Assembly (NCBI RefSeq): GCF_052425735.1
Contig: NC_135767.1
Coordinates: 21,390,001 to 21,454,000 of the forward strand
Length of the DNA stretch: 64,000 nucleotides
Origin: Oculina patagonica
Taxonomy: Eukaryota
Direction: 5' to 3'
Below, piece after piece: positions 11,952 to 61,050 of the stretch (positions within the stretch are counted from its first letter, which is position 1; each line of letters begins with the position of its first letter). A model generated the notes under the pieces. The model was not told where the DNA came from, did no database searches, and was given only the letters and a program-made list of their open reading frames with translations. The position numbers were made by a program, and so were the translations under genes.

Positions 11952-13064
11952 TTAGTCCGGAGAAATGCTTTTAAAATCCAGAGTGATCACAGTCTCACGT
12001 GACTTGCTCATCCGGGCTACAACGCGGTCACTGAACGTTGACGTGGTCTCAGCCTCTTCTCTGCCACAGCGAAGGACAATCTTGAGCGCCTGACGATACT
12101 TGGGAATTCTCCACGCGTACACAAACGGGTCAAGCAGGAATTTCAGGTAAAGCACGTTCTCCACCATAAGAAAACTAATGAGAACTCTTGGACTCGGAGG
12201 GTCTTCGAATACGTTCCCGTATAAATTGATACTCCACAGAATCACTGAAGGCTGAGAGCAAAGAAACAAAATGGCGATGAGAAGAAAATTAACGGTGATA
12301 AATTTTCGTTCCAGTGTCGTTTGTCTGTCATTTCGACATCCTCCTATGCCGTTATCTTCTCGGCGAAGATTTTTAGAAGCGGCCATTTTCTTCTTGAAAG
12401 CAACGTGCAAAAGGATGTAAAAGATTATAGTGAGATATGTAATAACAAATGAGTGGAAAATGTGATCAATTTTGTAGTGGATATCTTCGGGGACACCCAT
12501 CATACCCAAAAAGCTAAAAAATATAGCGTACGCATATATTGATATCACGGCTAACATTACACGCGTTTTGGTAACTTTAAGGGCATAGTTCAAAGGCGAA
12601 ATCACGACAATGTATTGTGTGACGGTAAAAGCCAACACGATAAGAAACGAAGCATTCCAGGCAGCAAGTGATATCGTTTGTCCTGTCTCAATGAGAGGTT
12701 TACATGTAGAAGCAGTGTCAGGGTGTCCGAGATACATCATTATGAAACATGTAGCGTTCATGGGCTGCTGAGTTGTGGCTGTTAAAATATCGACTAGGGC
12801 AAGACCGATCAGGAAATACGTGGTGGCGTTCTGGAATACCTTGAAAGGATCGAAGAAGAAAACCAAAAGTAACAAGCCGTTTGCCACGATGCTTGTGAAT
12901 GAAACGACGATTATGTAGATTGCGGAGCCAAAAGCGAACTTGTGGAACTCACGATAAGGGTTAGGCATAGCAACTGATGGCTGTGGTATAGTCAGTGGAC
13001 ATGATGAAGAATTTCCAGTGAAATTTGCTGTTAAGTTGCATCCTAATGCTGTTAAAGGTTCCAT
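11952..13064 (-). CDS. Atypical class A GPCR copy 4 (subfamily B), 370 aa
   Basis: Seven hydrophobic segments, TM1 Asn, LALVD, TQY, CSQP, LKFLLDPFVY, N-terminal glycosylation sequons. Confidence 0.93.
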   Translation of the reverse strand: MEPLTALGCNLTANFTGNSSSCPLTIPQPSVAMPNPYREFHKFAFGSAIYIIVVSFTSIVANGLLLLVFFFDPFKVFQNATTYFLIGLALVDILTATTQQPMNATCFIMMYLGHPDTASTCKPLIETGQTISLAAWNASFLIVLAFTVTQYIVVISPLNYALKVTKTRVMLAVISIYAYAIFFSFLGMMGVPEDIHYKIDHIFHSFVITYLTIIFYILLHVAFKKKMAASKNLRREDNGIGGCRNDRQTTLERKFITVNFLLIAILFLCSQPSVILWSINLYGNVFEDPPSPRVLISFLMVENVLYLKFLLDPFVYAWRIPKYRQALKIVLRCGREEAETTSTFSDRVVARMSKSRETVITLDFKSISPD

Positions 13065-14412
13065 TTTGCATTAACGCTTTGACAAAGTAAGGTCTGTCTC
13101 ACCTTAAATTGTAACAGGTGAAACAAGTGTAATTGGCTAACGCGATTGTTTTAGTTTCTTTTATTTATATGTACCGGTAGTACTTTGATGACAGAACATA
13201 GGGGGGTCTTTAGCGCTTTAAAACGCCTACTGCTTGTTGATATTTAGCTCGTCCCCTTTTCCTTTTTTTTTGGGGGGTGAAGGTTATTCCTTTTGTTTAC
13301 CACATTCATGCATTATAAGATTAGTTGCATGTCGATCTTTCCGTTTGATTTTTCTTTCTCTTGATGTCTGTCTTGTAATCCGCTGTACACTTTAGAACGT
13401 CAGTTTAAGTTTATGTTCTGCGTCACAATAATATCACGGTAGGATATCTCTCTTTGCAATATATGAAAGCCAGCACCAACCGATGGGCTAATGTATCAAA
13501 TTTGAAATCGAAATTACTTGTTAAATTTGTACGCTTACGTCCAGTGGTGGCTTTAATTGTTTTTTATTTTATTTTGGTGAAAAGATTAAAAAGGGTTGAA
13601 AGCCACGAATTGATGTATTATGGGTTTTCCTCGATGTTTTGCAGCTATAGTTTACCTGCTCTATGTTGTTTGAAGGTTTACGTAGTTTTCTAAGTTCTTC
13701 TTTGTTTCACGTTACTGGTGAGCTTTTTACACTGAGGGGAGCCGACCTGATTGAATACGAGGTACTTTTGTACACTAGAGGTTTCAATTAATGTTCGTGG
13801 GAAGCGAGATTCTCAATATTTCAGTTGTGATTGTATCCCTTAGTTGTTTATGACACCACAAAAAAATAAAAAAAATCATAATGAATGTTCGTAATTTCTT
13901 TAACTGTTAGTGAAATTTTCCAATTACACACATGGTCAATAATGCATTAAACCTTTCACTCCTGGAGACAGGAACAGAACTTTCGTCCCAGTTGCAGCCT
14001 GTAAATAAGCTATCTTTCTCAAGATAAGATAATTTAAAATTACAGACAGCAGGAGGGTATTCGAAACACACGTGACAAAATCGCGATTGGCTTCATTTGC
14101 CTTTGCATCTGATTAGTATAGTAAAAAACATCAACTTCATAAACTGTAAATTCCTTCTGTATGTTTTTTTTTTATTGACATGTATTCCTAAAGCTTTGTT
14201 TAACCCATGCTAAGTGCTTTCTGTCCAACTACAGCGGTGATCTATTGAGCTTTGAGTAACATTACTTTTTCTACTTGCATTAAATCTGATTAGTAACAAA
14301 TAGCATTTATAATTTAAACGGGACAACCTTGATTGAAAACTTCTGCTTACTTTGTGCTGCTCTATATAGATAAAGAGTTTTACTTTTATTTCACGTTCAT
14401 CGAGCTTCGAGC

Positions 14413-15516
14413 TTATTCCCTGGAAATGCTTTTAAAGTCCAGAGTGACCACAGTCTCACGTGACTTGCTCATCCGGGCTACAACGCGGTCACTGAACGTT
14501 GACTGGGTCTCAGGCTCTTCTCTGCCACAGCGCAGGACAATCTTGAGCGCCTGACGATATTTGGGAATTCTCCACGCGTAGACAAACGGGTCAAGCAGGA
14601 ATTTCAGGTAAAGTATGTTATCCACCATGAGATTGACAATCAGAACTTTTGGACTGTTAACGTCCTCATTGGAGTACAAGCGATAAATCCACAACATGGC
14701 GGAGGGCTGAGAAGCCAGAAACAATATGGCAATCAGAAGAAAGTTCACAATAATAAACTTTCGCTCCACGCCCGTTTGCCTACCATTCTTTCTTTCATCT
14801 TGTGTGTTGCTGTCTTCTTGAAGATTTTTGGAAGCGGCCATTTTCTTCTTGAAAGCGATGTATAGGAGAATATAAAAGATTATGGTCAGATATATCAAGG
14901 AAATGGAATGAAATGTATTGTCGATCTTTTGTGCGATATCTAACGGGATGCCCATACGAGGTGACACGCTGAACAGTATAGAGTAAACGTAAATGACCAA
15001 GACGCAGATAATCACACGTTTTTTCGTCACCTTTCGCGCGTGCTTCAAAGGCGAAATCACGACAATGTACTGTGTGATGGTAAAAGCCAACACGATAAGA
15101 AACGAGGCATTCATGGCAGCTACAGCTATCGTTCGTCCTGTCTCCAAGAGAGGTATACATATAGAAGCAGTGTCAGGGTGTCCAAGATACATCATTATGA
15201 AACATGTAGCGTACATGGGTTGCTGGGTCGCGGCTGTTAAAATATCAACCAACGCGAGACCGATCAGGAAATAAGTGGTGATATTCCTGAATATCTTGAA
15301 AGGGTCGAAGAAGAAAACAATAAGCAACAAGCCGTTTGCTACGATGGTTGTGAATGAAACGAAGATCATGTAGATTGCGGAGCCAAAGGCAAACTTGTAG
15401 AACTCGAGATAAGGGTTAACCATTGGCGCTGAAGGTGGCGGTATAGGCTGTGGACATGAAAAATTTGCAGTAAAATTTGTTGTTAAGTTGCATCCTTTCG
15501 CTGGTAAACGTTCCAT
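14413..15516 (-). CDS. Atypical class A GPCR copy 5 (subfamily B), 367 aa
   Basis: Intact 7TM ORF with family motifs; very close to 25148-26251. Confidence 0.93.
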   Translation of the reverse strand: MERLPAKGCNLTTNFTANFSCPQPIPPPSAPMVNPYLEFYKFAFGSAIYMIFVSFTTIVANGLLLIVFFFDPFKIFRNITTYFLIGLALVDILTAATQQPMYATCFIMMYLGHPDTASICIPLLETGRTIAVAAMNASFLIVLAFTITQYIVVISPLKHARKVTKKRVIICVLVIYVYSILFSVSPRMGIPLDIAQKIDNTFHSISLIYLTIIFYILLYIAFKKKMAASKNLQEDSNTQDERKNGRQTGVERKFIIVNFLLIAILFLASQPSAMLWIYRLYSNEDVNSPKVLIVNLMVDNILYLKFLLDPFVYAWRIPKYRQALKIVLRCGREEPETQSTFSDRVVARMSKSRETVVTLDFKSISRE

Positions 15517-16440: not shown

Positions 16441-16934
16441 AACGATTATTCGTTCATTTCATCCAAGTCGCCATTTTGCCTATCAAATAAACTTAAACTA
16501 AAACACCGCTAATTTGTTGGAGATTTTGCTATTTTAAAAATAAAAGAGTTAATTTGAGCTCAACGAAATTTGCTAAGGCCTTATTTTTGTCTCGTTTTAA
16601 TCTTGCAGAAAACTCGCTATAGTATAACTTGATTCGACTACTTAAGAACACATAAAGCAACGTGCTCTATTTTGCTATTTGAGCGGTCGTTGCGCTGATT
16701 AAAGCAATTTGAAACTTAGGTCTTACATCCGAAATCCCCGAGATTCGTCAAATTAGCCCTAACTAGGGTGAGTTGTAGGAGGAAGCTTATGATCAAAATT
16801 TGGACAATTTGGCACGGAAGTTTAAAACCAAACAGAAACAAAACAAAGGGAAACCCAGCATTAGCTACATACTATGTTGTGAGCAAAAAGCATCAGGCTA
16901 CCTGCATGATATTTGTACGGTGGCCCACAACTGT

Positions 16935-17130
16935 CACGGCAAAAGAAAAAGACTCGCGGCAAAAAGAAAAGCCTCACGGCAAAAAGAAAAACCTCGCGGC
17001 AAAAAGAAAAACCTCACGGCAAAAAGAAAAACCTCGTGGCAAAAAGAAAAACCTCACGGCAAAAAGAAAACTCACGGCAAAAAGAAAAACCTCGCTGCGA
17101 AAAGAAAAGCCTCACGGCGAAAAGAAAAAT
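16935..17130. repeat. Minisatellite, about 10 copies of a ~20-bp unit CACGGCAAAAAGAAAAACCT
   Basis: Directly visible; explains the three overlapping Lys/Arg-rich ORFs. Confidence 0.95.
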
Positions 17131-18870
17131 AGGTCCGCACTGCGTACTAGTGCTGAGCTTTATTGAGCTTTGTGCATTACTGTATTGCTCGGTCACGGTA
17201 GTGCATTTATTAGGATTTTGTCGGCATAGACTATAGGTGTAGAGGAAGGGTCAAACTATCAAGCTTCAACAGTGTAGCGAAGGAATATTGGTAGAAGTTA
17301 TAAACAGGTACAAGGTGATCCAGGAGAGCCATCTGTAGTAGACGTTGCATAATAGCTAGAGTCGCCTCATAGAAGCTAAAGATGGACGATTCTTGCGCTT
17401 CTTGCGTGGTTAGCAACCTCCCTCGTGCATCCATAACTCAATAGTGCACGTTGTGGCGTTAACCATTTGTTAATTGGTTAGAGGCGGCGAAATACCAGAA
17501 CGCTGGGGTGATAGAACATCCACCGATCACATATGTGAATAATTATAAGCTATTACCATGGGTTCTTTTAAACTACGTATACATTTCACTTGTAACTTAT
17601 AAAAGCTAGTTTCATGTATATATCTCCTGGCTAAAAAGAGATCACGCTACCTATGTTAAACTGGTAAAAATTATAAAAGGCAAAGAATACAACGCAAGTT
17701 TTACTCACCACGCCAACGTCAGTTGAAATAAATGACTGATAAAGACCAACAGGTATTCCTCGGTTTGCATATAGAGTAACTGTGAAGCTTAGCTTATTTT
17801 ATACTGTTCGCTTTGGAAAGTAAAAATACGTAGCTTAATCCGTAAAGCGTGTTTCCTCTGGAAAATTCAAGAGGGACCTTTATATTTTTGAGCGGGGGGA
17901 GGGGAGAAGAGTGGCTGCACTGCAAAAAGGAAAAAAAAAAGAGAGAGAGAAAGAGAGAGAACAAAAAATTCGTGCAAAGCAAGACACTATAAGTAAATAT
18001 ATAGAACAAAGCCAAAAAAAATTCTTGCACAATTTGAAGCTGGACAATTATTGCTCAGAAAAATTGCCCAACTCCTCAAAAAGGTATAATGGTCCATTCC
18101 TTAGAAAATGAAATTTTCTAGTTACAGGTCGTTTCAGATTTTTCATTTTCCTAAAGGACTGAAATTTTGAGAATCATGTTTATTTCATGAATTGCAAAAA
18201 CAAGAAGCGAACTTATTGGTGAGCAGAAAAAAAATGCAAATTGGCATTCACTTGTTTAACTTCCATGATGTCACTATTAATTTAAGCCTCAAATGACCAA
18301 ACAAGCCAACTGGCTTTTTCAAGATCGTATATATCCATCGTCTTTTAATTAAAATACACTATTTGAAAAGATGAAATAAACCCAAAGATTACTAAACCAC
18401 CGAAAAAGAGGAAATTGAGAATCCGAAAAAAAAAACATTCAGGAGTCTTAGGAGTTAGAAGTTGGAAGTATTTCTAACTTGTAAGCTCTCAAAACACCGT
18501 CCAAATTTCAAACCGAGTTGCCGGCGGACTTTCACACAGATTTTTAAACACAGGAAAGGAAAACGCTATAGTTAGGTTACTGCTTCTTTTAAATGCTGAA
18601 TACAGTATGCTAAATGTTATTTTTAAAGGGTTGATTTGCTTTATAGGCCTTATCATGGTTTTCGAAGCCATCTTGACGAGTAGGCAAAAGCGGGTAGAAA
18701 TTATAGTGTTTGTATGGGAATCCGACGGCAAATATCTTTTACAAAAATTGAATTCTGGACAACTTATGTTAAGATACTAGGCAAAAGTTTTAATTGCCGA
18801 GTTTGAAGGATGTAGCTGGGCTAGAAAGCGTTCAGTTTAAACAACAACAATATGAAATAACTCAAAATAA

Positions 18871-20640: not shown

Positions 20641-21735
20641 ATGAATTCCTCCATCCATTGTAATATCACTGAAAACATAACAGTGAGCAATGACAGCACC
20701 TGTGGAGCAGAGCAGGAAGTTTTCTCAGACCCCTACGAAGACGCAGTGAGATTCGCTTTCGGTTCTGCCATATACATGATAGTGGTAGCCTTCATCACGA
20801 TTGTAGCGAACGCTCTACTGCTTCTAGTCCTGCTTATCGACCCGCTGAAGACGTTCAAGAATCCAACCTCTTATTTCCTCATCGGTCTGGCGATAAGCGA
20901 TTTGTTAACCGGAATGATCCAGCTGCCACTCTTCTCAAGCTGTTTTATTTTCTTTTATCTCCAAGGTCCAGAGCGAGGTCTAATCTTGTGTGATGAAATT
21001 TTGTTACCCTTAGGTGAAACTCAGGCGGCCATTACTATGACCATATCATTTCTAATAGTATTTGCGTTTACTTTTACACAATTTGTAATCGTGTCCTCCC
21101 CTCTCAAGTACGCCCGCATGGCGACCTCGCGCAAAGTCGCTATTTGCGTTGTTATTTTATACGTTTACACTATTTTGTTGTGGGTTTCGCAGTATTGGGG
21201 AGTGCCCATTGAAGTGCTTGGTAAGATCGATGTTTTTCTGCACAGTTTAACCATCCCCTATGCCACGATTATAATTTATATTCTGTTACATCGCACTTTC
21301 AAACGCAAAATGGCCGCTTCAAAAATGCTTTCGAGTGATAGGCACATACAACGGGAATCTAACGAGTCGCAAAGTAATCGCATCCAGCGCAAGTTTATTA
21401 CCGTTAATTGTATTCTGATTGCCATTCTATTCTTCTGTTCGCAACCTACAGCCATATTTTGGCTGTTAAGGGAGTTTTGGTTTCAAGAGATAACTCCGCA
21501 GTTGTTGATTATCAATCTTATGATTGATAATATACTTTACTTGAAGATTATGCTTGATCCATTTGTTTACGCATGGCGTTTGCCGAAGTACAGGGAGGCC
21601 CTGAGGGTTATTTGCCCAGTACTGAAGAAATGCAGGCGTAAATCAAGATATGAGAAGCGAATAGAAGAGTCGGTAATTGGCCAGTCACGAGAAACAATAA
21701 TGACTTTGGACATTAGAAAAATTGAAGGTGAATAG
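20641..21735 (+). CDS. Atypical class A GPCR copy 6 (divergent singleton), 364 aa
   Basis: Intact 7TM ORF; TQF, CSQP, LKIMLDPFVY, tail SRETIMTLDIRKI. Confidence 0.93.
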   Translation: MNSSIHCNITENITVSNDSTCGAEQEVFSDPYEDAVRFAFGSAIYMIVVAFITIVANALLLLVLLIDPLKTFKNPTSYFLIGLAISDLLTGMIQLPLFSSCFIFFYLQGPERGLILCDEILLPLGETQAAITMTISFLIVFAFTFTQFVIVSSPLKYARMATSRKVAICVVILYVYTILLWVSQYWGVPIEVLGKIDVFLHSLTIPYATIIIYILLHRTFKRKMAASKMLSSDRHIQRESNESQSNRIQRKFITVNCILIAILFFCSQPTAIFWLLREFWFQEITPQLLIINLMIDNILYLKIMLDPFVYAWRLPKYREALRVICPVLKKCRRKSRYEKRIEESVIGQSRETIMTLDIRKIEGE

Positions 21736-21966
21736 AAATGGCGAAAAGGTGGGGAGGGAGAAGTTGTTGAATGTCGAGAGGCGTTGATAATGATTGCATA
21801 AAAACTCATTTTCTCAACAAAATTATTTAGACATCGATAGTGCACGGGTCTAAAAACAGCTACGTCTGTAAAATAGCTACTTTTTCTCGATGAAACTGAG
21901 TCCGTGTCGAGGTTCTTTCAATTGATACACTGTATGTAAAGTATTATTAATAATAGAGTAAAGTCT

Positions 21967-24398: not shown

Positions 24399-24429
<31 letters not shown>

Positions 24430-25147: not shown

Positions 25148-26251
25148 ATGATGGCTCTTGAATCAGACCTAATCTGTAATGTTACGACAAACTTCACTAG
25201 AAATTCTTCATCATGTTCACAGCATATCCCAGCAGCACCCATGGTCAACCCTTATAAAGAGTTCTACAAGTTTGCCTTCGGCTCCGCAATATACATAATC
25301 ATCGTTTCATTCACAACCATCGTAGCAAACGGCTTGTTGCTTATTGTTTTCTTCTTCGATCCTTTCAAGATATTCAGGAACATCACCACTTATTTTCTGA
25401 TCGGTCTTGCTTTCGTCGATATTTTAACAGCCGCGACGCAAGAACCCATGTACGCTACATGTTTTATAATGATGTATCTTGGACACCCTGACACTGCTTC
25501 TACATGTATTCCTCTCTTGGACACAGGACGAACGATAGCTGTAGCTGCCATGAATGCCTCGTTTCTTATAGTGTTGGCTTTTACCATCACCCAGTACATT
25601 GTCGTGATTTCGCCTCTGAACCACGCGCGAAAGGTGACAAAAAAGCGAGTGATAATCTGCGTGTTAGCCATTTACGTGTACTCTATACTGTTCAGCCTGT
25701 CACCTCGGATGGGCGTCTCATTAGATATCCAACACAAGATCGACAACATATTTCATTCTATTTCCTTGATATATCTGACCATAATCTTTTATGCCCTCCT
25801 GTACATTGCTTTCAAGAAGAAAATGGCCGCTTCTAAGGGTCTTCGAGAAGAAAACAACATGCAAAATGGAAACATGAATGAGAGGCAAACGGGCGTGGAG
25901 CGAAAGTTTATTATTGTGAATTTTCTTCTGATCGCCATATTGTTTCTGACGTCTCAGCCCTCCGCCATGTTGTGGATTTATCGCTTGTACTCCAAAGAGG
26001 ACGTAAACAGTCCAAAAGTTCTTATTGTTAATCTGATGGTGGATAACATACTTTACCTGAAATTCCTGCTTGACCCGTTTGTGTACGCGTGGAGAATTCC
26101 CAAATATCGTCAGGCTCTCAAGATTGTCCTGCGCTGTGGCAGAGAAGAGCCTGAGACCCAGTCAACATTCAGTGACCACGTTGTTGCCCGGATGAGCAAG
26201 TCACGTGAGAATGTCGTCACTCTGAGCTTCAATAAGATTTCCCCGGCCTAA
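25148..26251 (+). CDS. Atypical class A GPCR copy 7 (subfamily B), 367 aa
   Basis: Intact 7TM ORF with family motifs; TATAAAA at about 25080 and AATAAA at about 26319. Confidence 0.93.
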   Translation: MMALESDLICNVTTNFTRNSSSCSQHIPAAPMVNPYKEFYKFAFGSAIYIIIVSFTTIVANGLLLIVFFFDPFKIFRNITTYFLIGLAFVDILTAATQEPMYATCFIMMYLGHPDTASTCIPLLDTGRTIAVAAMNASFLIVLAFTITQYIVVISPLNHARKVTKKRVIICVLAIYVYSILFSLSPRMGVSLDIQHKIDNIFHSISLIYLTIIFYALLYIAFKKKMAASKGLREENNMQNGNMNERQTGVERKFIIVNFLLIAILFLTSQPSAMLWIYRLYSKEDVNSPKVLIVNLMVDNILYLKFLLDPFVYAWRIPKYRQALKIVLRCGREEPETQSTFSDHVVARMSKSRENVVTLSFNKISPA

Positions 26252-30419: not shown

Positions 30420-31529
30420 ATGGATGCTGAAACAGCGCTAGAATGTAACGCTACAGCGGCTAATTTCACTGGGAATTCCTCATCATGCCTACCGTCTTTG
30501 CCGCCACCAGCAGCACCTATGGTCAACCCTTATGACGAATTCTTCAAGATCGCTTTTGGCTCCGCAATCTACATCATCATCATTTCATTTACAACCATCG
30601 TAGCAAACGGCTTGTTGCTTGTGGTTTTCTTCTTCGATCCTCTAAAAATATTCCGAAACGCCACCACTTATTTCCTGATAGGTCTTGCCTTTGTGGATAT
30701 TATAACAGCCGCGACCAACCAACCAATGTACGCTACATGTTTCATAATGATGTATATTGAACACCCTGACACTCGTGAAACATGCTTGCCTCTCCTGGAG
30801 ACAGGACAAACGATAGCACTTGCCGTCATGAATGCCTCGTTTCTTATCGTGTTGGCTTTTACCATCACTCAGTACATTGTGGTGATTTCTCCTCTGAACC
30901 ACGCGCGAAAGGTGACAAAAACGCGCGTTATCATCTGCGTGTTGGTCATTTACGTCTACGTTGCACTGTTCAGCGTCGCACCTCGTATGGGCGTCCCTAG
31001 AGATATCCAACAGAAGATTGATAACACATTTCATTCTATTGCCTTGATATATCTGACCATTCTCATTTACATCCTCCTGTACATTGCCTTCAAAAAGAAA
31101 ATGGCCGCTTCCAGGAGTCTTCGAGAAGACAGCAACAGAAACGACGAAGGAAGGAATGAGAGGCAAACAGGTGTGGAGCGAAAGTTTATTATTGTGAATT
31201 TTCTTCTGATTGCCATTTTGTTCCTGACGTCGCAGCCCTCCGCTATGCTGTGGATCTATCGCTTGTATTCCAACGAGGACGTTAACAGTCCAAAAGTTCT
31301 GATTGTCAATCTGATGGTGGATAACATACTGTACCTGAAATTCCTGCTTGACCCGTTTGTGTACGCGTGGAGAATTCCCAAATATCGTCAGGCGCTCAAG
31401 ATTGTCCTGCGATGTGGCAGAGAAGAGGCTGAGACCAAGTCAACGTTCAGTGACCAGGTTATGGCCCAGATGAGCAAGTCACGTGAGACTGTGGTCACAC
31501 TGGACTTTAAAAGCATTTCCGTGGACTGA
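30420..31529 (+). CDS. Atypical class A GPCR copy 8 (subfamily B), 369 aa
   Basis: Intact 7TM ORF with family motifs. Confidence 0.93.
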   Translation: MDAETALECNATAANFTGNSSSCLPSLPPPAAPMVNPYDEFFKIAFGSAIYIIIISFTTIVANGLLLVVFFFDPLKIFRNATTYFLIGLAFVDIITAATNQPMYATCFIMMYIEHPDTRETCLPLLETGQTIALAVMNASFLIVLAFTITQYIVVISPLNHARKVTKTRVIICVLVIYVYVALFSVAPRMGVPRDIQQKIDNTFHSIALIYLTILIYILLYIAFKKKMAASRSLREDSNRNDEGRNERQTGVERKFIIVNFLLIAILFLTSQPSAMLWIYRLYSNEDVNSPKVLIVNLMVDNILYLKFLLDPFVYAWRIPKYRQALKIVLRCGREEAETKSTFSDQVMAQMSKSRETVVTLDFKSISVD

Positions 31530-35414: not shown

Positions 35415-36557
35415 ATGAACCTTACATGCAACAACTCCTGGATCAACATCACCAGCAATTCTACAAACGAGCTAAATCGAAGTGTATCAGGCAACCATTC
35501 GTCTTGCATCAACGCCTCCCCCGAGTCAGCAATGGCAGTCAACCCGTTGGAAGATTTTTACAAAGCCGCTTTTGGTTCCTCCATCTTTATATACGTGGTC
35601 TCGCTCACAACCATCTTGACCAACAGTCTTCTTCTCTTCGTTTTCTATCGCGACCCACTAAAAATGTTTCGCAACCCAACAACATTTTTTCTCATTGGTT
35701 TGGCCATAGTCGACATACTAACAGCACTGGTTCAGCAGCCCATTTACGCCACTTGTTTCATGTTGCTGTACTTTAAACATCCTTCTACAAGGAAATGCCG
35801 ACCTTTTATAGATGCTGGAAGGATTGTTGGAGCTTTCGCTATGACCGCATCGTTCCTAATCGTCTTCGCCTTTACCGTGACGCAGTACGTCGTAGTTAAA
35901 TCGCCTCTAAAGTACGGCCGCTTGGTCACAAAGAAGAAAGTCTTGATCAGTGTTGCGTTCATCTATCTTTACTCAGCAACGTTCTGGTGCCTGCATTTGA
36001 TGGGTGTGCCTCCATATGTTCAGGACATCATGGAACTTTCCATTCACAGCTATCTGTTGGCCATTGTCAATATCGTTTTCTACATACTCTTGCACTGTGC
36101 TATGAAAAAGAAGACAGCAGCAGGAAAATCACTTCAAGGCGAAGCTGGAAATCGAGAAAGCGGTAAGCACATCCAAGTGCAGCGTAACTTTGTTCGCGTG
36201 AATTTCATGCTTCTATCCGTGCTGATTGTATGTAACATGCCGGCAGCTGTTGTGTGGACGATAAGACTGTTCATTGAAGACAACAAAACCCTTCCTACCG
36301 CGAAGACCCTGATTGCAAACCTGATGGTAGATAACGTGCTCTACATGAAATTTCTGTTGGACCCGTTTGTATACGCATGGCGCATGGTGAAGTACCGAGA
36401 GGCGTTTTATAAAAGCATCCGCCGCAAAGGAACTGGCAGGAAATCGCACGACAGCACCAGCACCACTGCAGGAGGAGAAACCCAACAAGTGGAATTGTCA
36501 AGCGCGCCATCAAACGGATCAATGGTAACTTTGCTGAGTTTTAAAAGTCTGGAATAA
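35415..36557 (+). CDS. Atypical class A GPCR copy 9 (subfamily A), 380 aa
   Basis: Intact 7TM ORF; TQY, CNMP, YMKFLLDPFVY. Confidence 0.93.
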   Translation: MNLTCNNSWINITSNSTNELNRSVSGNHSSCINASPESAMAVNPLEDFYKAAFGSSIFIYVVSLTTILTNSLLLFVFYRDPLKMFRNPTTFFLIGLAIVDILTALVQQPIYATCFMLLYFKHPSTRKCRPFIDAGRIVGAFAMTASFLIVFAFTVTQYVVVKSPLKYGRLVTKKKVLISVAFIYLYSATFWCLHLMGVPPYVQDIMELSIHSYLLAIVNIVFYILLHCAMKKKTAAGKSLQGEAGNRESGKHIQVQRNFVRVNFMLLSVLIVCNMPAAVVWTIRLFIEDNKTLPTAKTLIANLMVDNVLYMKFLLDPFVYAWRMVKYREAFYKSIRRKGTGRKSHDSTSTTAGGETQQVELSSAPSNGSMVTLLSFKSLE

Positions 36558-41462: not shown

Positions 41463-42632
41463 ATGAATTTTACATGCAACGCGTCACTGGCCAATATAAG
41501 CCTCAATTCTTCAAATGAGCTAAATCACAGTACATCTGGTAATAATTCAGTCTGCAGTAAGGCTTCCGCTGAATCAGCAAGGGCGACCAACCCGTATGAA
41601 GATTTTTACAAAGCCGCTTTCGGTTCCTCCATCTTCATCTTCGTGGTGTCGCTCACGACCATCCTAGCAAATGGTTTCCTTCTATTCGTCTTCTACCGCG
41701 ACCCACTTAAAATCTTCCGCAACGCAACAACATATTTTCTCATCAGTTTGGCCATAGTCGATTTACTAACAGCACTCAGTGTAGAACCCATTAACGCCAC
41801 TTGTTTCATGTTGCTGTACTTTCAGCATCCTTCTACAAAGAAGTGCCGCCCTTTCATGAACGCTGGAAGGTATTTTTCCGCTTCTACGATGACGGCATCG
41901 TTCCTGATCGTCTTCTTCTTTACCGTGACCCAGTACATCGTAGTTTCATCGCCTCTAAAGTACGGCCGCTTGATTACAAAGAAGAAAGTCTTGATCTGCG
42001 TTTCGGTCATCTATCTTTACTCAGCAACGTTCTGGTGCCTGCATTTGATGGGTGTGTCTCCGTATGTCCAGGATGTCATGGAACTCTTTATCCACAGTTA
42101 TCTATTGGCCATTGTCACTATCGTTTTCTACATACTCTTGCATCTTGCCATGAGAAAGAAGATGGCAGCAGGAAAATCGCTTGAAGGTCAATCTGGGAAA
42201 CGAGAAGGCGGTAAGCACATCCAAGTGCAGCGCAATTTTGTTCGCGTGAATTTCATGCTTCTATCCGTGTTGATTGTATGTAACATGCCGGCAGCTGTCA
42301 TATGGACGATAAGACTGTTCATAGAAGACAGCAAATCCCTTCCTTCCGCGAAGATCCTGATTGGAAACCTGATGGTTGATAACGTGCTCTATATGAAATT
42401 TCTGTTAGATCCATTTGTGTACGCTTGGCGCATGCCGAAGTACCGAGAATCCCTCAACAAACTTATTTGTCGCAGAAATATCGGCGGGGAATCGAGTCGA
42501 AATGGAAACAACAACATGTTAGCAGTTGAAGAGGTTCGTGATGGCGGGTTGTCAACAGTGGAATTGAACAAATCGGCGATAACTTTACTAAGCTTTAAAT
42601 ATATCGAGGAGTCGAACGTTCCCATTGAGTGA
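41463..42632 (+). CDS. Atypical class A GPCR copy 10 (subfamily A), 389 aa
   Basis: Intact 7TM ORF; body like copy 9, tail like copy 1. Confidence 0.93.
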   Translation: MNFTCNASLANISLNSSNELNHSTSGNNSVCSKASAESARATNPYEDFYKAAFGSSIFIFVVSLTTILANGFLLFVFYRDPLKIFRNATTYFLISLAIVDLLTALSVEPINATCFMLLYFQHPSTKKCRPFMNAGRYFSASTMTASFLIVFFFTVTQYIVVSSPLKYGRLITKKKVLICVSVIYLYSATFWCLHLMGVSPYVQDVMELFIHSYLLAIVTIVFYILLHLAMRKKMAAGKSLEGQSGKREGGKHIQVQRNFVRVNFMLLSVLIVCNMPAAVIWTIRLFIEDSKSLPSAKILIGNLMVDNVLYMKFLLDPFVYAWRMPKYRESLNKLICRRNIGGESSRNGNNNMLAVEEVRDGGLSTVELNKSAITLLSFKYIEESNVPIE

Positions 42633-42926
42633 CTGTTCATAGACGGTTATCTAGATTCTTTCGCGCAAAATGTTCTGATTGCAAACCCTATGGTAGATAA
42701 CGTGCTCTACATGAAATTCCTGTTAGACTCGTTTGTGTACGCGTGGCGCATGCCGAAGTACCGAGAGGCGTTTTATAAAAGCATCCGCCGCAAAGGAACT
42801 GGCAGAAGGTCGAATGACGACACCAGCACTAGTGCAGGAAGAGTAACCCCACAAGTGGCGTTCTCAAGCGTACCACCAAACAGATCAATTGTAATTTTGC
42901 TGAGTTTTAAAAGCCTACAAGAATAA
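42633..42926 (+). pseudogene. Second ECL3-TM7-tail module, in frame after the copy 10 stop
   Basis: LFIDGYLDSFAQNVLIANPMVDNVLYMKFLLDSFVYAWRMPKYREAFYKSIRRKG...ILLSFKSLQE*; the tail matches copy 9. Confidence 0.88.
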
Positions 42927-44024: not shown

Positions 44025-44172
44025 NNNNNNNNNNNNNNNNNNNNNNNNNNNNNNNNNNNNNNNNNNNNNNNNNNNNNNNNNNNNNNNNNNNNNNNNNNNN
44101 NNNNNNNNNNNNNNNNNNNNNNNNNNNNNNNNNNNNNNNNNNNNNNNNNNNNNNNNNNNNNNNNNNNNNNNN
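44025..44172. other. Assembly gap
   Basis: N run. Confidence 1.
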
Positions 44173-48610: not shown

Positions 48611-49000
48611 AGAGTGATATTTTTCTAACTCATAAAGCTGGCTGTAAACGTGCATAAACAAGACGACAGAAGTATATAAAGAAAAAGGGGTACAATACTT
48701 GTGAAGCACATAACAAATTTAATTTGATTACTTATACAAGAAGAATGTATTCATTAATTAATTGTCTTCAAGAAGAAAGTTGAAAATGTAGAAAGCCGTT
48801 AATTGAAAATTGTGAACTCATGTCACTGACCAAATATAATTTCGCTACAGTGCTTTCTTTTTGTCGCCAGGTGTTTCTCTTCATTTGGCTCAATATAAAC
48901 GCTTGGCCAAATTTCACTTGACATAGTTTCCAAGTTTGAGTGACCTGCCAGCGCCCGGATTGGCTTAAGAAGTCTTCCACTCGTAAAAACCTCGTCCAAG

Positions 49001-50096
49001 ATGAACCTTACATGTAACAACTCCTTAAACGGCCAGCAATTCTTCAGTTTGCGCCCAGACACCGCCGATCAACCCGTTTGAGGATTTTTTCAAGGCCGCT
49101 TTCGGCTCTGCCATCTTCATGTTCGTGGTTTCGTTTATCACAGTTCTAGCCAACAGCCTTCTTCTTCTCATTCTCTGCATCGACCCACTGAAAATCTTCC
49201 GCAACCCAACCACGTATTTCCTCATCGGTTTGGCCATAGTCGACTTACTAACAGGACTGGTTCAAGAACCCATATACGCCACTTGTTTCATGTTCTCATA
49301 CTATCAACATCCCTCGATGGCCAAATGTAAACCATATATGGAGTTTGCATATTACTTCGCAACGTTCTCTATAACGGTATCTTTGATAATCGTTTTCGCC
49401 TTTACTGTGACGCAGTACATCGTGGTTGCATCGCCTCTAAAGTACGGCCGCTTGGTGACAAAGAAGAAAGTCTTAATTAGCGTCATGTTAATCTATGTCT
49501 ACAGTGCCATCTTCTCTTGCCTGACTTTGATGGGTGTTTCAGAAAAAGTTCACGAGGCCATAACATTGTTCCTTCACAGCTATGCAGTGGTCCTGGTCAC
49601 CATCGTTTTCTACATTCTTCTGCATTACACCATGAAAAGGAAAATGGCGGCAGCGAACTCTCTTCAAAACGAAAGTACATCCCGTCAGGGAAGTAAACAT
49701 ACTGAAGTGCAACGGAACTTCGTGCGGTTGAACGTTATCCTCTTAATTGTGCTGATTGTGTGTTTCGTGCCTACGATGATTATGATGACAATAAGACTGT
49801 ACATGGGTGATTATCTAAATCCTTCTGCAGTACCTGTTCTGATTGCAAATTTGATGACAGATAACCTGCATTACCTGAAGTTCCTGTTAGACCCGTTCGT
49901 GTACGCGTGGCGCATGCCGAAGTATCGGGAATCTCTCAGCAAAGTTGTTTGCTGCAAAAATATCGGTAAGAAATCGAGTCGAAATGGAAATAAAAGCATG
50001 TCGACAACAGCATTTAATGTTAGTGAATCAACAACTACAGAACTGAACAAATCGACAATAACTTTGCTCAGCTTTAAAAATGTCCCCACGGACTAA
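49001..50096 (+). pseudogene. Atypical class A GPCR copy 11 (subfamily A), single N-terminal frameshift
   Basis: ATG 49001 (MNLTCNNS) is out of frame with ORF 49119-50096. Removing one base near 49031 gives MNLTCNNSLNASNSSVCAQTPPINPFEDF. Confidence 0.75.
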
Positions 50097-53908: not shown

Positions 53909-55060
53909 ATGAACCATACGTGCAACGCCTCATGGCTTAACATTAGCAGCAATTCTTCAAACTGGCTAAACCAAAACGTATCTGCTTATCTGTCAGCTTG
54001 CAGTGAGTTCGGCGCCCAGATACCTCCGCCGATCAACCCGTTTGAGGATTTCAACAAAGCCGCTTTCGGTTCCTCGATCTTCATGTTCGTGGTTTCGTTT
54101 ATCACAGTCCTAGCCAACGGTCTTCTACTTCTCATTTTTTGTGTCGACCCACTGAAAATCTTCCGAAACCCAACCACGTATTTTCTCATCGGTTTGGCCA
54201 TAGTCGACTTACTAACAGGACTGGTTCAAGAACCCATATACGCCACTTGTTTCATCTTCTTGTACCTTCAACATCCTTCGATGGCGAAATGTCAATCATA
54301 TATGCAATTTGCATATTATTTTGCGACCTTCTCTATAACGGTATCTTTGATAATCGTTTTCGCCTTTACCGTGACGCAGTACATCGTGGTTGCATCGCCT
54401 CTTAAGTACGGCCGTTTGGTGACAAAGAAGAAAGTCTTAATTAGCGTCGTGCTCATCTATGTCTACAGTGCCATCTTCTCTTGTCTGCCTTTGATGGGTG
54501 TTTCAGAAAAAGTTCACGAGGCCATAACACTGTTCCTTCACAGCTATGCAGTGGTGCTGGTCACTATCGTTTTCTACATTCTTCTGCATTACACAATGAA
54601 AAAGAAAATGGCGAGTGGAAACTCCCTTCGAAACGAGAGTACATCTCGCGAAGAGAGTAAACATGCGCAAGTACAACGAAACTTTGTTCGCTTGAACGTT
54701 ATACTCTTAATTGTGCTGATTGTGTGTTTTGTGCCAACGATGATTATGATGACAATACGACTGTACATGGAAGAACATCTAGCTCCTTACTGGCCAAATG
54801 TTCTGATGGCAAATTTGATGACAGATAACCTGCATTACCTGAAGTTCTTGCTGGACCCGTTCGTGTACGCGTGGCGCATGCCGAAATATCGGGAATCTCT
54901 CAGTAAAGTTGTTTGCCGTAAAAGTATTGGAAAGGAATCGAATCGAAATGGAAATAAAAGCATGTCAACAGGAGCAATCAGCGTCAGTGAATTGACAACT
55001 ACAGAAATGAACAAATCGACAATAACTTTGCTTAGCTTCAAAAATGTCCCGACAGACTAA
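53909..55060 (+). CDS. Atypical class A GPCR copy 12 (subfamily A)
   Basis: Intact 7TM ORF; first ATG is 53909 (the track start at 53900 is GTG). Confidence 0.93.
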   Translation: MNHTCNASWLNISSNSSNWLNQNVSAYLSACSEFGAQIPPPINPFEDFNKAAFGSSIFMFVVSFITVLANGLLLLIFCVDPLKIFRNPTTYFLIGLAIVDLLTGLVQEPIYATCFIFLYLQHPSMAKCQSYMQFAYYFATFSITVSLIIVFAFTVTQYIVVASPLKYGRLVTKKKVLISVVLIYVYSAIFSCLPLMGVSEKVHEAITLFLHSYAVVLVTIVFYILLHYTMKKKMASGNSLRNESTSREESKHAQVQRNFVRLNVILLIVLIVCFVPTMIMMTIRLYMEEHLAPYWPNVLMANLMTDNLHYLKFLLDPFVYAWRMPKYRESLSKVVCRKSIGKESNRNGNKSMSTGAISVSELTTTEMNKSTITLLSFKNVPTD

Positions 55061-58593: not shown

Positions 58594-58934
58594 CATGCAT
58601 TTCTTATTTTCATGCAAGCTATACGAAAACATACGTTTAAAGTTCTTTAATGAAATAACCGCCAAATATAGTATTTTTAACGAGTTTGATATTAATGCAA
58701 AATCTTTATTTCTTTGTAACAGCATTGATCCTGCTGTTTGTCGATCAACTGCTGCTTTTGTTTTTCAAGCTATGTCTCTTAGACATGAAACTTTATTTTC
58801 CAAATGATAAAATCGCATTTTTTTTTTGTTTCATTTCTGATACTACTTGTAATTTCTCAAGTGTAAGTAGGTAATGCCATGTATTTTTATGGAAATACCT
58901 CAATAAATTGTTGTTGTTGTTGTTGTTGTTGTTG
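58594..58934 (+). mobile_element. 5'-truncated LINE 3' end (RTEX/CR1-like) with (TTG)n tail
   Basis: HFLFSCKLYENIR ORF2-type C-terminus with stop at 58807; AATAAA then (TTG)n; absent from the paralogous spacer near 52915. Confidence 0.65.
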
Positions 58935-59889
58935 TAAAAGCCGCCTTATAGCAATGGGCGCTTTTTGGAGTACTTCATTTACATGATCAATTTGCACTCA
59001 AAGAACATTGTTGCAGAATTTTTACACATCGTATATTTCAGATGAGGCGTAAGTTCTTGATTAAATAATCCTTTCTTTCCTCAGGCGAGATTAAGATATG
59101 TATTAGGTTTTGCCATCAAGGAAGGTAAAACAAAAGCTAGCCTACAAATTAGCCTTTTTATGCCCTCAGTTGCTTTTTTTAAAATAACACACATATAAAA
59201 AACGAAAGACTAGGAAGAGTTTGCAGTTAAGTTTTCAGATTTACTCTTCGGATCAACGTCCGAAAGTCAAATTTTTGTTATCATATGTGACTTAAGAGGA
59301 GCTTTTCACAGTTATGGACAAAATTTGGGCATTATTGATAAACGTAATTAAAGAAAACGAGAATTTCCTGCTGTGCCAAATAATTTGTTCTATTTCTTGA
59401 CCCTAGCGTGGGGTAGAATTACTCATTAATTAAAGTTATTGAAATTACGGCTGTTTATCTTAAGCTCCAAAAGAAAATTGATAATTCAATTTAACCTGCT
59501 ACTGTTAATGCGTCTAATTTAGAAAAGAGAGTGATAGTCATATGGCGGAAAAACCTAATTGTTAAGGAATTGGAGCAAGTTAGTAGGCAGGTAGGTGGCT
59601 GGCAGATGGATGATATACCCTTAAATGGTAAAGAAAAATAAGCAACTATGCTTTAGCCGTTAATGCACAATAGAGATCATTTTAAATTGAAAGTAGCATG
59701 TTGACATTCCTTGTTGACAAACACGCATCTAAGAAAGCTCAGTGTTGTATTTGACGTATTTCAGCTGTTGCTTTTCATGTGCTAATGACATTTAATCAGA
59801 GGTTTCCCACCGTTACAACAAACAAAACAGAAAAACCATAACTCGAAACTCAAAAGTTTGCGAACCCTTTCTTCAGGAAAGTGGATAAG

Positions 59890-61050
59890 ATGGACCTTAC
59901 GTGCAACGCCTCGTGGCTTAACATTAGCAGCAATTCTTCTGATTCTTCAAACTGGCTAAACCAAAACGTATCTGCTCATCTGTCAGCTTGCGGTGAGTTC
60001 GGCGCCCGGAGACCACCACCGATCAACCCTTTTGAGGATTTTTACAAAGCCGCTTTCGGCTCTGCCATCTTCATGTTCGTGGTTTCGTTCACCACAGTCC
60101 TAGCCAACAGCCTTCTTCTTCTCATTTTCTGCATCGATCCATTGAAAATCTTCCGCAACACTACCACATATTTCCTCATTGGTTTGGCCATAGTCGACTT
60201 GTTAACAGGACTGGTGCAAGAGCCCATATACGCCACTTGTTTCATTTTCTTGTACTTGCGACATCCTTTGACGCCCAAATGTCAACCATACATGCAATTT
60301 GCACATCACTTCGCAACCTTCTCGATAACGGTATCGTTGGTAATCGTTTTCGCCTTTACCGTGACGCAGTATATCGTGGTTGCATCACCTCTGAAGTACG
60401 GCCGTTTGGTGACAAAGAAGAAAGTCCTCATTAGCGTCGTGTTCATCTATGTCTACACTGCAATCTTCTCTTGTCTGCCTTTGATGGGTGTTTCAGAAAA
60501 AGTTCACGATGCCATAACACTATTCCTTCACAGCTATGCAGTGGTCCTGGTCACCATCGTTTTTTACATCCTTCTGCATTATACCATGAAAAGGAAAATG
60601 GCGGCAGCGAACTCACTTCAAAACGAAAGTACGTCCCGTCAGGAAAGTAACCATACTAAAGTGCAACGGAACTTTGTTCGCTTGAACGTGATCCTTTTAA
60701 TTGTGCTGATTGTGTGTTTCGTGCCTACGATGATTATGATGACAATACGACTGTACATGGAAGAACATCTAGCTCCTTACTGGCAAAAGGTTCTGATTGC
60801 AAATTTGATGACAGATAACCTGCATTACCTGAAATTCCTGTTAGACCCGTTCGTGTACGCGTGGCGCATGCCGAAGTATCGAGAATCTCTCAGTAAAATA
60901 ATTTGCCGTAAAAATATCGCAAAGAAATGGAGGGGAAGTGAACGCGAGAGCAAGTCTACAACTGGAAGTCGCGTTAGTGAATTAACAACTGTGGAACTAA
61001 ACAAATCGGAGATAACTTTGCTAAGCTTTAAAAATATCTCTGTGGACTGA
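59890..61050 (+). CDS. Atypical class A GPCR copy 13 (subfamily A)
   Basis: Intact 7TM ORF; first ATG is 59890 (the track start at 59881 is GTG). Confidence 0.93.
   Translation: MDLTCNASWLNISSNSSDSSNWLNQNVSAHLSACGEFGARRPPPINPFEDFYKAAFGSAIFMFVVSFTTVLANSLLLLIFCIDPLKIFRNTTTYFLIGLAIVDLLTGLVQEPIYATCFIFLYLRHPLTPKCQPYMQFAHHFATFSITVSLVIVFAFTVTQYIVVASPLKYGRLVTKKKVLISVVFIYVYTAIFSCLPLMGVSEKVHDAITLFLHSYAVVLVTIVFYILLHYTMKRKMAAANSLQNESTSRQESNHTKVQRNFVRLNVILLIVLIVCFVPTMIMMTIRLYMEEHLAPYWQKVLIANLMTDNLHYLKFLLDPFVYAWRMPKYRESLSKIICRKNIAKKWRGSERESKSTTGSRVSELTTVELNKSEITLLSFKNISVD

What the first reader, a model, noticed from the sequence alone, without database searches (positions are those of the whole stretch)
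11952..61050. Invariant TM7 lysine at about 7.45: built-in sodium mimic or shifted opsin-like lysine
Seen: Y-[LM]-K-x-x-x-D-P in all 13 copies, with D2.50, S3.39 and D7.49 retained. Known: 7.45 is usually Asn and lines the allosteric Na+ pocket; the opsin retinal lysine is 7.43, which is Tyr here. Inference: the Lys amine could salt-bridge D2.50/D7.49 in place of Na+, making the receptors Na+-insensitive in seawater or pH-tuned. A covalent aldehyde ligand is a less likely alternative.
Basis: partly seen in the sequence, partly recalled or inferred. Interest (0 to 1): 0.7.

Follow-up and report, generated by a model that had tools for sequence, protein, structure and literature searches.

The report
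Coral receptor family with built-in lysine
A tandem array of orphan coral cell-surface receptors belongs to a large sea-anemone-and-coral receptor family. In this family a lysine never varies at the spot where ordinary receptors hold a regulatory sodium ion, so the lysine probably acts as a permanently attached stand-in for that ion.

Summary
Y-[LM]-K-x-x-x-D-P occurs in 13 paralogous intronless class A GPCR copies. Ten lie in the stated range and three are broken copies upstream at 2453-10864. A relic tail at 42636-42926 is a fourteenth instance. Gap-free alignments to A2A, CB1 and H2 place the Lys at 7.45.

The Lys defines a hexacorallian clade (Scleractinia and Actiniaria), with at least 45 genes in this genome. 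It is the most conserved column: 115 of 115 sequences, at a median 27% identity, with both Lys codons in use. S3.39 is 99% conserved and D7.49 97%. D2.50 is kept in only about 75%. The clade never has R3.50 (TQY replaces DRY) and never has W6.48.

The best reading is a tethered cation in the sodium pocket. Published work supports this: DP1 has K2.54 with D7.49, C3.50 and S6.48; N7.45K in S1P5 is predicted to mimic sodium; N7.45K in the mu-opioid receptor loses function.

The opsin reading is not supported. The seawater argument is weak, because conventional DRY/N7.45 receptors sit in the same genome. The N gap is intergenic. A neighbouring window of this scan noted the same motifs.

The parts
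11952..13064 (-). Intact intronless GPCR copy; K7.45 codon 12141-12143 (AAA)
   Evidence: (7tm_1 E=4e-11)
14413..15516 (-). Intact copy; K7.45 codon 14602-14604. Contigs of two probable RNA runs lie only on this ORF and about 150 bases either side
20641..21735 (+). Intact copy, the most divergent in the window (YLKIMLDP); K7.45 codon 21544-21546 (AAG)
25148..26251 (+). Intact copy, used for the high-confidence AlphaFold2 model; K7.45 codon 26060-26062
   Evidence: (pLDDT 87.5)
30420..31529 (+). Intact copy; K7.45 codon 31338-31340
35415..36557 (+). Intact copy, used as reference for numbering: N70=1.50, D100=2.50, S146=3.39, T156-Q157-Y158=3.49-3.51, P276=6.50, K312=7.45, D316=7.49. K codon 36348-36350
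41463..42632 (+). Intact copy; K7.45 codon 42396-42398
42636..42926 (+). Relic second TM7 plus tail, directly after the stop of the previous copy. It keeps the Lys (42714-42716) but has Ser at 7.50 (YMKFLLDS)
49029..50096 (+). Copy with an intact receptor body, but its MNLTCN start lies in another frame upstream (an indel in the N-terminal segment). K7.45 codon 49878-49880
53909..55060 (+). Intact copy; K7.45 codon 54842-54844 (AAG)
59890..61050 (+). Intact copy; K7.45 codon 60832-60834
2453..3790 (-). Pseudogene copy outside the stated range, in three frames with a TAG and an insertion of about 160 bases in TM3. K codon 2672-2674 is kept
5793..7561 (-). Copy outside the stated range, split in the third intracellular loop by an insertion of about 540 bases with inverted ends. 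K codon 6096-6098 is kept
9700..10880 (-). Pseudogene copy outside the stated range, with a frameshift near 10353 and a TAA in TM6. K codon 9939-9941 is kept
44025..44172 (.). Assembly gap. It is intergenic and touches no copy

Best explanation
These genes belong to a large clade of orphan class A GPCRs in Hexacorallia whose conserved activation core has been rebuilt around a lysine at 7.45.

Inferred mechanism: the Lys amine sits permanently in the cavity that normally holds the allosteric Na+ ion. It is ion-paired with D7.49, and with D2.50 where present, and hydrogen-bonded to S3.39. It therefore does what Na+ does elsewhere, which is to hold the resting state, but independently of ambient sodium.

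The clade also lost the DRY arginine (TQY) and the 6.48 tryptophan on the same branch of the tree. A fixed cation that favours the resting state is thus combined with removal of the usual ionic lock. Agonist binding would have to move or neutralise the Lys-Asp pair to activate the receptor, as K2.54 does in the prostaglandin D2 receptor DP1.

Shown here: the position, the conservation, the accompanying substitutions, the single origin, and purifying selection. Inferred: the salt bridge, the insensitivity to sodium and the switching.
For: Position. Gap-free alignments put the Lys on N7.45 of A2A, CB1 and H2. Position 7.45 lines the Na+ pocket, and H7.45 touches Na+ at 2.4 A in CXCR4 simulations (PMC6037435).

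Conservation. K7.45 is present in 115 of 115 clade sequences and is the most conserved column. S3.39 follows at 99% and D7.49 at 97%. Median identity to the reference copy is 27%. Both Lys codons are used.

Single origin. On a tree built without the trait columns, K7.45 and the loss of R3.50 each change once, on the same split.

Other clade-specific changes: S7.46 becomes F/V, N7.49 becomes D, R3.50 becomes Q, and 6.48, 6.51 and 6.52 go from aromatic to small residues.

Acidic partners. No Lys-bearing sequence lacks an acid at both 2.50 and 7.49, although 2.50 changed at least 10 times and 7.49 at least 4 times.

The genes look functional. dN/dS is 0.19-0.31 between recent paralogues. The outer halves of TM3 and TM7 vary while the inner halves are conserved.

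Published support. DP1 K2.54 fills the Na+ pocket and bridges D2.50, and DP1 also has D7.49, C3.50 and S6.48 (PMC12508460). S3.39R in M2 and N7.49R in M4 mimic Na+ and lock the inactive state (PMC7055379). N298(7.45)K in S1P5 is predicted to 'mimic sodium-binding' (PMC9374744). N330(7.45)K in the mu-opioid receptor loses function (PMC13309543).
Against: No Lys-Asp distance was measured. The AlphaFold2 model is confident (pLDDT 87.5), but its coordinates are not exposed.

K7.45 and the loss of R3.50 arose once, so their association is a single event and not repeated covariation.

The absence of sequences lacking both acids is not statistically strong, because about one such sequence would be expected by chance.

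D2.50 is dispensable in about a quarter of the clade, so the Lys-D2.50 pair cannot be the universal contact.

Engineered cations in this pocket inactivate receptors. A clade that carries one and still signals needs compensating changes that have not been shown.

No ligand, G-protein coupling or sodium sensitivity is known for any member.
Confidence: 0.5

Rival explanations
1. The Lys only neutralises the extra acid D7.49, one helical turn away on TM7 (positions i and i+4). The pocket is then electrically like a normal N7.45/N7.49 receptor, and D2.50 can still bind Na+.
For: K7.45 and D7.49 are the tightest pair, at 100% and 97%, while D2.50 varies. They are four residues apart on one helix. 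About a fifth of class A receptors carry D7.49 (PMC12508460).
Against: Many receptors carry D7.49 without any compensating base. S3.39 is also near-invariant. S7.46 is replaced by F/V, which removes a usual Na+-shell residue. A four-carbon side chain in this small cavity leaves little room for an ion and its waters.
Confidence: 0.2
2. The Lys is a common non-covalent ligand anchor, as D3.32 is for amines. A polar or anionic group of the agonist reaches it through a pocket floor opened by small residues at 6.48, 6.51 and 6.52.
For: In the clade, 6.48, 6.51 and 6.52 are S/T/A/V/H, where the nearest DRY relatives have aromatic residues. The outer halves of the helices vary as in ligand-diversifying families. 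In DP1 the pocket Lys swings up to contact the agonist.
Against: The Lys sits beside one or two buried acids, which would repel an anion. It lies deeper than usual orthosteric contacts. This reading overlaps with the switch model and does not exclude it.
Confidence: 0.15
3. The receptors are locked in the resting state and do not signal through G proteins. They would act as decoys or scavengers, or through other partners.
For: They have no R3.50. Engineered pocket cations inactivate M2 and M4. N7.45K in the mu-opioid receptor loses function.
Against: DP1 lacks R3.50, has a pocket Lys and couples to Gs. The inner halves of the helices and helix 8 are strongly conserved. At least 45 genes are kept under purifying selection.
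Confidence: 0.08
4. The Lys forms a Schiff base with retinal or another aldehyde. The family would then be an opsin-like pigment with its lysine shifted two residues.
For: Automatic annotation calls some members melanopsin-like. Melanopsins and squid rhodopsin are among many tied fold matches. D or E occupies 7.39, the counterion site of one anthozoan opsin group (from my own knowledge), in about two thirds of the clade.
Against: Position 7.43 is Y/F/L, 3.28 is G/A, and 3.25 is not Cys. The second extracellular loop is short and lacks Cys in 97 of 115 sequences. No opsin is among the best 60 solved sequences by phmmer or by profile; CB1, H2, 5-HT2A and A2A lead. The fold matches are tied at 15-20% identity across many families.
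Confidence: 0.03

Closest known systems
Prostaglandin D2 receptor DP1 (human PTGDR), cryo-EM structures of 2025 (PMC12508460)
   Same: A lysine amine occupies the Na+ pocket and takes the ion's place. The receptor has D7.49 (DPxxF), no R3.50 (ECW) and no W6.48 (Ser). It still couples to a G protein, and the Lys acts as the activation switch.
   Different: In DP1 the Lys is at 2.54 on TM2, and 7.45 is Ile. It is one receptor and not a family. The coral clade has G/A at 2.54. It is not close to prostanoid receptors by sequence; its best solved matches are CB1, H2 and A2A. The resemblance is therefore convergent.
N7.45K point variants of canonical receptors: S1P5 N298K and mu-opioid N330K
   Same: The same residue at the same position. 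The S1P5 authors predict that it mimics bound sodium and stabilises the inactive state. The opioid variant loses function.
   Different: These are rare variants in receptors that keep DRY, W6.48 and N7.49. In the coral clade the Lys is the wild type of a whole group that has changed those motifs too.
Engineered sodium mimics S3.39R (M2) and N7.49R (M4) (PMC7055379)
   Same: A basic side chain placed in the pocket bridges D2.50 and S3.39 and replaces Na+.
   Different: These are man-made, use Arg at other positions, and lock the receptor inactive for crystallography.
Chemokine receptors with H7.45 or R7.45 (R in CCR7, CCR10 and CXCR6) (PMC6037435)
   Same: A natural family-level replacement of N7.45 by a basic or ionisable residue in the Na+ pocket.
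   Different: The residue is His or Arg, not Lys. DRY, W6.48 and N7.49 are kept, and H7.45 helps bind Na+ and does not replace it.
MECA and amine receptors of the alpha group of class A GPCRs (cannabinoid, adenosine, melanocortin, histamine H2, 5-HT2A)
   Same: These are the best sequence matches among solved structures (CB1 E=2e-15). As in the MECA receptors, there is no TM3-ECL2 disulfide and no P5.50 (and my own knowledge of MECA). Melanocortin receptors also have DPxxY (my own knowledge).
   Different: Identity is 15-20%. There is no orthology; automatic names differ from species to species. K7.45 and TQY are absent from all of them.

Membership tests
Class A (rhodopsin-like) GPCR, Pfam PF00001 7tm_1 | Match to the 7tm_1 profile above Pfam's gathering score, over its whole length | tested here: met
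   Four copies score 38-58 bits against a cut-off of 30.5, over profile positions 2-260 of 260
Class A (rhodopsin-like) GPCR, Pfam PF00001 7tm_1 | Seven-helix fold matching solved receptors | tested here: met
   The model has pLDDT 87.5 and pTM 0.84, with seven helices plus helix 8. Foldseek probability is 1.00 to many class A structures
Class A (rhodopsin-like) GPCR, Pfam PF00001 7tm_1 | Canonical microswitches: D/E-R-Y at 3.49-3.51, W6.48 in CWxP, and NPxxY | tested here: not met
   The clade has T/S-Q-Y/F and never R3.50. It has S/T/A/V at 6.48 and never W. It has DPxxY/F. The fold and the other anchors (N1.50, S3.39, P6.50, P7.50) are kept, so this is a divergent member and not an outsider
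Opsins (retinal-binding GPCRs) | Lysine at 7.43 (bovine K296) for the Schiff base | tested here: not met
   Position 7.43 is Y in all window copies and F/Y/L across the clade. Anthozoan opsin surveys discard sequences without K296 (PMC8097283)
Opsins (retinal-binding GPCRs) | Counterion acid at 3.28 or in the second extracellular loop, and the C3.25-ECL2 disulfide | tested here: not met
   Position 3.28 is G/A and 3.25 is hydrophobic. The ECL2 region has no Cys in 97 of 115 sequences. An acid at 7.39 is present in about two thirds, which alone is not diagnostic
Opsins (retinal-binding GPCRs) | Closer by sequence to opsins than to other class A groups | tested here: not met
   No opsin is among the best 60 solved sequences with one protein or with a profile. 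Fold searches tie opsins with cannabinoid, serotonin and adrenergic receptors
Receptors with a built-in cation in the Na+ pocket (DP1 type) | A basic side chain at a pocket-lining position, with an acid at 2.50 and/or 7.49 | tested here: met
   K7.45 by gap-free alignment. D7.49 is present in 97% and D2.50 in about 75%, and the two are never both absent
Receptors with a built-in cation in the Na+ pocket (DP1 type) | An observed salt bridge between the amine and the pocket acid, and exclusion of Na+ | not testable with these tools
   Model coordinates are not returned, and no simulation or assay is available
Receptors with a built-in cation in the Na+ pocket (DP1 type) | The same residue as DP1 (K2.54), which would indicate homology with DP1 | tested here: not met
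   Position 2.54 is G/A in the clade. Prostanoid receptors are not among the best solved matches. This is an analogue and not a relative

The most novel reading that the evidence does not exclude
The invariant Lys, reachable through a pocket floor emptied of its aromatic residues (6.48, 6.51 and 6.52 are small), binds a carbonyl ligand covalently as a Schiff base. The ligand could be retinal or another aldehyde. The clade would then be a second, independently derived kind of lysine-linked pigment or aldehyde sensor among animal GPCRs.
Probability: 0.04. Interest if true: 0.9.

Novelty: new variant of a known kind. Interest (0 to 1): 0.55.

Why it matters
The allosteric sodium site and the DRY arginine are treated as near-universal parts of class A GPCR activation. 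This is a natural group of more than 100 sequence clusters, maintained since before the anemone-coral split. It keeps a lysine on the sodium site and does without both the DRY arginine and the toggle tryptophan.

If the lysine is a tethered ion, the clade is a ready-made test of what sodium does in activation. It is also a family-scale counterpart to the single human case, DP1. It would show how a substitution that inactivates a canonical receptor (N7.45K) can be made compatible with signalling.

For coral biology, it marks a large, tandemly expanding and probably chemosensory receptor family that is now mislabelled as melanopsin, cannabinoid, adenosine or melanocortin receptors.

Tried and rejected
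Lys-Asp distance. Two AlphaFold2 runs were made. With 21 sequences the model was poor (pLDDT 60); with 134 it was good (pLDDT 87.5).

Fold searches. The PDB and Swiss-Prot searches gave only tied generic class A matches and do not place the family.

Literature. Searches for K7.45 or Lys7.45 found no description of a natural Lys-7.45 family, only the two point variants. Searches for cnidarian GPCR papers and for the Nematostella accessions found nothing about this clade.

Taxonomic range. Named ones are all Scleractinia or Actiniaria. Absence elsewhere is not shown.

Expression. One look-up and one lay of contigs gave only a hint for the copy at 14413-15516. The runs' RNA label is a guess, and close paralogues could contribute.

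Covariation. The link between K7.45 and the loss of R3.50 looked striking in tables, but it reduces to one event on the tree. It is not counted as repeated evidence.

Seawater adaptation. This is rejected as a necessity, because at least 17 conventional DRY/N7.45-type receptors were found among the nearest relatives in the same genome.
Full report
WHAT IS IN THE WINDOW

The window holds a tandem array of intronless genes for class A GPCRs. Nine copies have intact frames:
- 11952-13064 (minus strand)
- 14413-15516 (minus strand)
- 20641-21735
- 25148-26251
- 30420-31529
- 35415-36557
- 41463-42632
- 53909-55060
- 59890-61050

All match Pfam 7tm_1 over its full length. A tenth copy, 49029-50096, has an intact receptor body, but its MNLTCN start lies in another frame just upstream.

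Three further copies lie upstream of the stated range and are broken:
- 2453-3790 is in three frames, with a TAG and an insertion.
- 5793-7561 is split in the third intracellular loop by an insertion of about 540 bases with inverted ends.
- 9700-10880 has a frameshift and a TAA.

A relic second TM7 plus tail follows the stop of the copy at 41463-42632.

The array continues outside the window, with three more intact copies upstream on the same contig.

THE ASSEMBLY GAP

The N run at 44025-44172 lies between the relic tail (which ends at 42926) and an unrelated conventional GPCR gene (45305-46243). No open frame longer than 22 codons touches it. Its flanks show no similarity to the family, even with HMMER's filters off. 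It affects none of the copies. I did not try to fill it.

THE OBSERVATION

Y-[LM]-K-x-x-x-D-P occurs in all 13 copies, plus one chance match full of stops. The relic reads YMKFLLDS.

Alignments to A2A by phmmer, and to CB1 and histamine H2 by profile, run without gaps from 7.43 to helix 8. They place the Tyr on 7.43, the Lys on N7.45 and the Asp on N7.49.

HOW FAR THE LYSINE REACHES

A profile search of 1.84 billion cluster representatives gave 126 hits at E<=1e-30. A search of the whole genome gave 78 matches. I tabulated the key positions in both sets.

Every sequence falls into one of two classes:
- K7.45 with D7.49 (rarely N or H) and no Arg at 3.50. Position 3.50 is Gln in 89%, otherwise H, S, L, Y, A, N or C.
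- N/S/T/G at 7.45 with R3.50 and, in most, N7.49. This is the conventional pattern.

At least 45 genes in this genome carry the Lys. They lie in several tandem arrays, for example about ten on contig 3 near 17.73-17.83 Mb.

Among 115 full-length Lys-bearing sequences, median identity to the reference copy is 27% and the minimum is 20%. The Lys column is the single most conserved one, at 115 of 115. S3.39 follows at 99% and D7.49 at 97%. N1.50 is at 95% and P6.50 at 90%. Both AAA and AAG encode the Lys: 10 to 3 in the window, and 19 to 36 in the other loci. The amino acid is therefore held by selection and not only by recent ancestry.

On a FastTree built without the three trait columns, K7.45 changes once and R3.50 changes once, on the same split. 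The Lys is thus a shared derived character of one clade. Its link with the loss of the arginine is one historical event and not repeated covariation.

Named members are:
- Nematostella vectensis ('melanocortin receptor 5')
- Actinia tenebrosa ('cannabinoid receptor type 1B-like')
- Actinostola
- Pocillopora ('adenosine receptor A3-like', earlier 'neuropeptide Y receptor type 2-like')
- Stylophora ('adenosine receptor A1')
- Orbicella, Oculina and Montipora ('melanopsin-like')
- Desmophyllum

The clade therefore spans sea anemones and stony corals. The conflicting automatic names show that it has no known orthologue.

WHAT ELSE CHANGED WITH THE LYSINE

The clade was compared with its nearest DRY-bearing relatives:

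| Position | Nearest DRY relatives | Lys clade |
|---|---|---|
| 7.46 | Ser | Phe/Val |
| 7.49 | Asn | Asp |
| 3.49-3.50 | D/E-R | T/S/V/A-Q |
| 6.48 | L/F/W/Y | S/T/A/V |
| 6.51, 6.52 | aromatic | small or His |
| 6.44 | Phe | Leu |
| 3.40 | small aliphatic | Phe/Tyr |
| 5.50 | Pro (20 of 38) | I/V/L |

D2.50 is kept in only about 75% of the clade. It changed at least 10 times within the clade, mostly to Asn. D7.49 changed at least 4 times. No Lys-bearing sequence lacks an acid at both sites. With these frequencies only about one such sequence would be expected by chance, so this agrees with charge pairing but does not prove it.

The constant trio is K7.45, S3.39 and D7.49.

ARE THE GENES FUNCTIONAL?

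Recent paralogue pairs give dN/dS of 0.19-0.31. Across the clade, the outer halves of TM3 and TM7 are much more variable than the inner halves: entropy 3.17 against 1.80 for TM3, and 2.74 against 1.21 for TM7. This is the pattern of receptors that diversify their ligand pocket while keeping a common signalling face.

In two runs that are probably RNA, contigs lie only on the ORF at 14413-15516 and about 150 bases either side. A DNA run covers the whole stretch. This is a hint of expression and no more.

Tandem arrays, missing introns, pseudogenes and transposon hits fit a fast-turnover family, plausibly chemosensory. That last point is inference.

MECHANISM

Position 7.45 lines the allosteric sodium pocket. 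In crystal structures N7.45 holds a water of the ion's shell. In simulations of CXCR4, H7.45 touches the ion at 2.4 A (PMC6037435). A lysine there can place its amine on or beside the ion's site, within reach of D2.50, D7.49 and S3.39. This follows from homology and side-chain length. I could not measure it, because the high-confidence model (pLDDT 87.5, pTM 0.84) is not available as coordinates.

The literature supports the idea at four levels:
1. Arg engineered at 3.39 (M2) or 7.49 (M4) bridges D2.50, replaces sodium and locks the inactive state (PMC7055379).
2. [quoted passage not shown] In the mu-opioid receptor, N330(7.45)K is a loss-of-function variant (PMC13309543).
3. Three chemokine receptors naturally carry R7.45.
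4. The 2025 structures of the prostaglandin D2 receptor DP1 show K2.54 occupying the sodium pocket and bridging D2.50. The same receptor has D7.49, C3.50 in place of the DRY arginine, and S6.48 in place of the toggle tryptophan. On agonist binding the Lys swings to the ligand and the pocket collapses. Restoring R3.50 lowers basal activity and potency (PMC12508460).

The coral clade shows the same four departures with the Lys on TM7 instead of TM2. By sequence it is not a prostanoid receptor, so the likeness is convergent.

My reading is as follows. The Lys is a tethered cation that stabilises the resting state independently of ambient sodium. Loss of the DRY ionic lock offsets that stabilisation. 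Activation requires the Lys-Asp pair to be moved or neutralised. I put this at about 0.5.

RIVALS

- The Lys may merely neutralise D7.49, one turn away on the same helix, leaving D2.50 free for sodium (0.2).
- It may be a common ligand anchor, reached through the hollowed floor of the pocket (0.15). This overlaps with the switch model.
- The receptors may be locked and non-signalling (0.08). DP1 and the conserved inner face argue against this.
- The Lys may form a Schiff base as in opsins (0.03).

Against the opsin reading: 7.43 is Y/F/L, 3.28 is G/A, there is no C3.25, and ECL2 is short and lacks Cys in 97 of 115 sequences. No opsin appears among the best 60 solved sequences, where CB1 (2e-15), H2, 5-HT2A and A2A lead. 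Melanopsin and squid rhodopsin do appear at the top of fold searches, but they are tied with cannabinoid, serotonin and adrenergic receptors at 15-20% identity. This probably explains the 'melanopsin-like' labels. Opsin surveys of Anthozoa discard sequences without K296 (PMC8097283), so this clade would have been filtered out of them.

The same genome keeps conventional DRY/N7.45/N7.49 receptors among the clade's nearest relatives. pH tuning by the buried Asp-Asp-Lys group is possible but untested.

NOVELTY

The principle of a side-chain cation replacing pocket sodium is known from engineering and from DP1, and the N7.45K idea is in print for a point variant. I found no description of a natural family built on K7.45, nor of this hexacorallian clade. 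The library searched lacks most subscription journals.

I class this as a new variant of a known kind, of moderate interest. It offers a natural, family-scale system for testing what the sodium site and the DRY arginine contribute to activation. A first-stage note on the neighbouring window of this genome (s1-317174) recorded the same motifs, and I confirmed them independently.

Noticed in passing
window 42636-42926 (+): Directly after the TGA of the copy at 41463-42632 lies an in-frame relic of a second TM7 plus C-terminal tail. It resembles the tail of the copy at 35415-36557, with Ser in place of P7.50. This is a partial duplication or the remains of a tail exchange.
   Followed up: partly
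window about 6335-6876 (-): An insertion of about 540 bases splits the copy at 5793-7561 in its third intracellular loop. Its ends are inverted repeats (GAGGGTCTGAATGGGG and CCCCATTCTGACCCTC), and AAGAAG flanks it on both sides. It looks like a miniature inverted-repeat transposon with a target-site duplication.
   Followed up: partly
window 38443-39631 (-): Two adjoining open frames match DUF3504 plus Phage_integrase, and QRICH1. This is a Crypton-like tyrosine-recombinase element or a gene derived from one, sitting inside the receptor array.
   Followed up: partly
window 45305-46243 (+): An unrelated class A GPCR gene (7tm_1 E=1e-26) sits in the middle of the array. Its TM7 is conventional (NSSLNPILY: N7.45, N7.49).
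   Followed up: partly
window 48990-49120 (+): The copy at 49029-50096 has its MNLTCNNS start in a different frame from the receptor body, because of an indel in the N-terminal segment. It is either a young pseudogene or an assembly error. dN/dS against its sisters is still 0.19-0.29.
   Followed up: partly
G000 contig 10, 21377456-21386935 (just before the window): The array continues upstream with three more intact Lys-7.45 copies and one badly broken copy. Other arrays of the clade lie on contig 3 (about ten copies at 17.73-17.83 Mb), and on contigs 9 and 2.
   Followed up: partly
clade alignment; in the copy at 35415-36557, residues about 207-211 and 306: Two features of the outer pocket are conserved. 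An Asp (77%) and a His (73%) lie four residues apart at the top of TM5. An acid sits at 7.39 in about 64% of the clade. Together they could form a shared ligand or metal site.
   Followed up: no
window 16825-17218: Contig depth is very high in all four runs laid, up to 2360 in the DNA run, and many loose ends fall at 16916 and 17147. This is a high-copy repeat between two receptor copies.
   Followed up: no
window 63708-63888: A second assembly gap, outside the finding and beyond the last copy.
   Followed up: no
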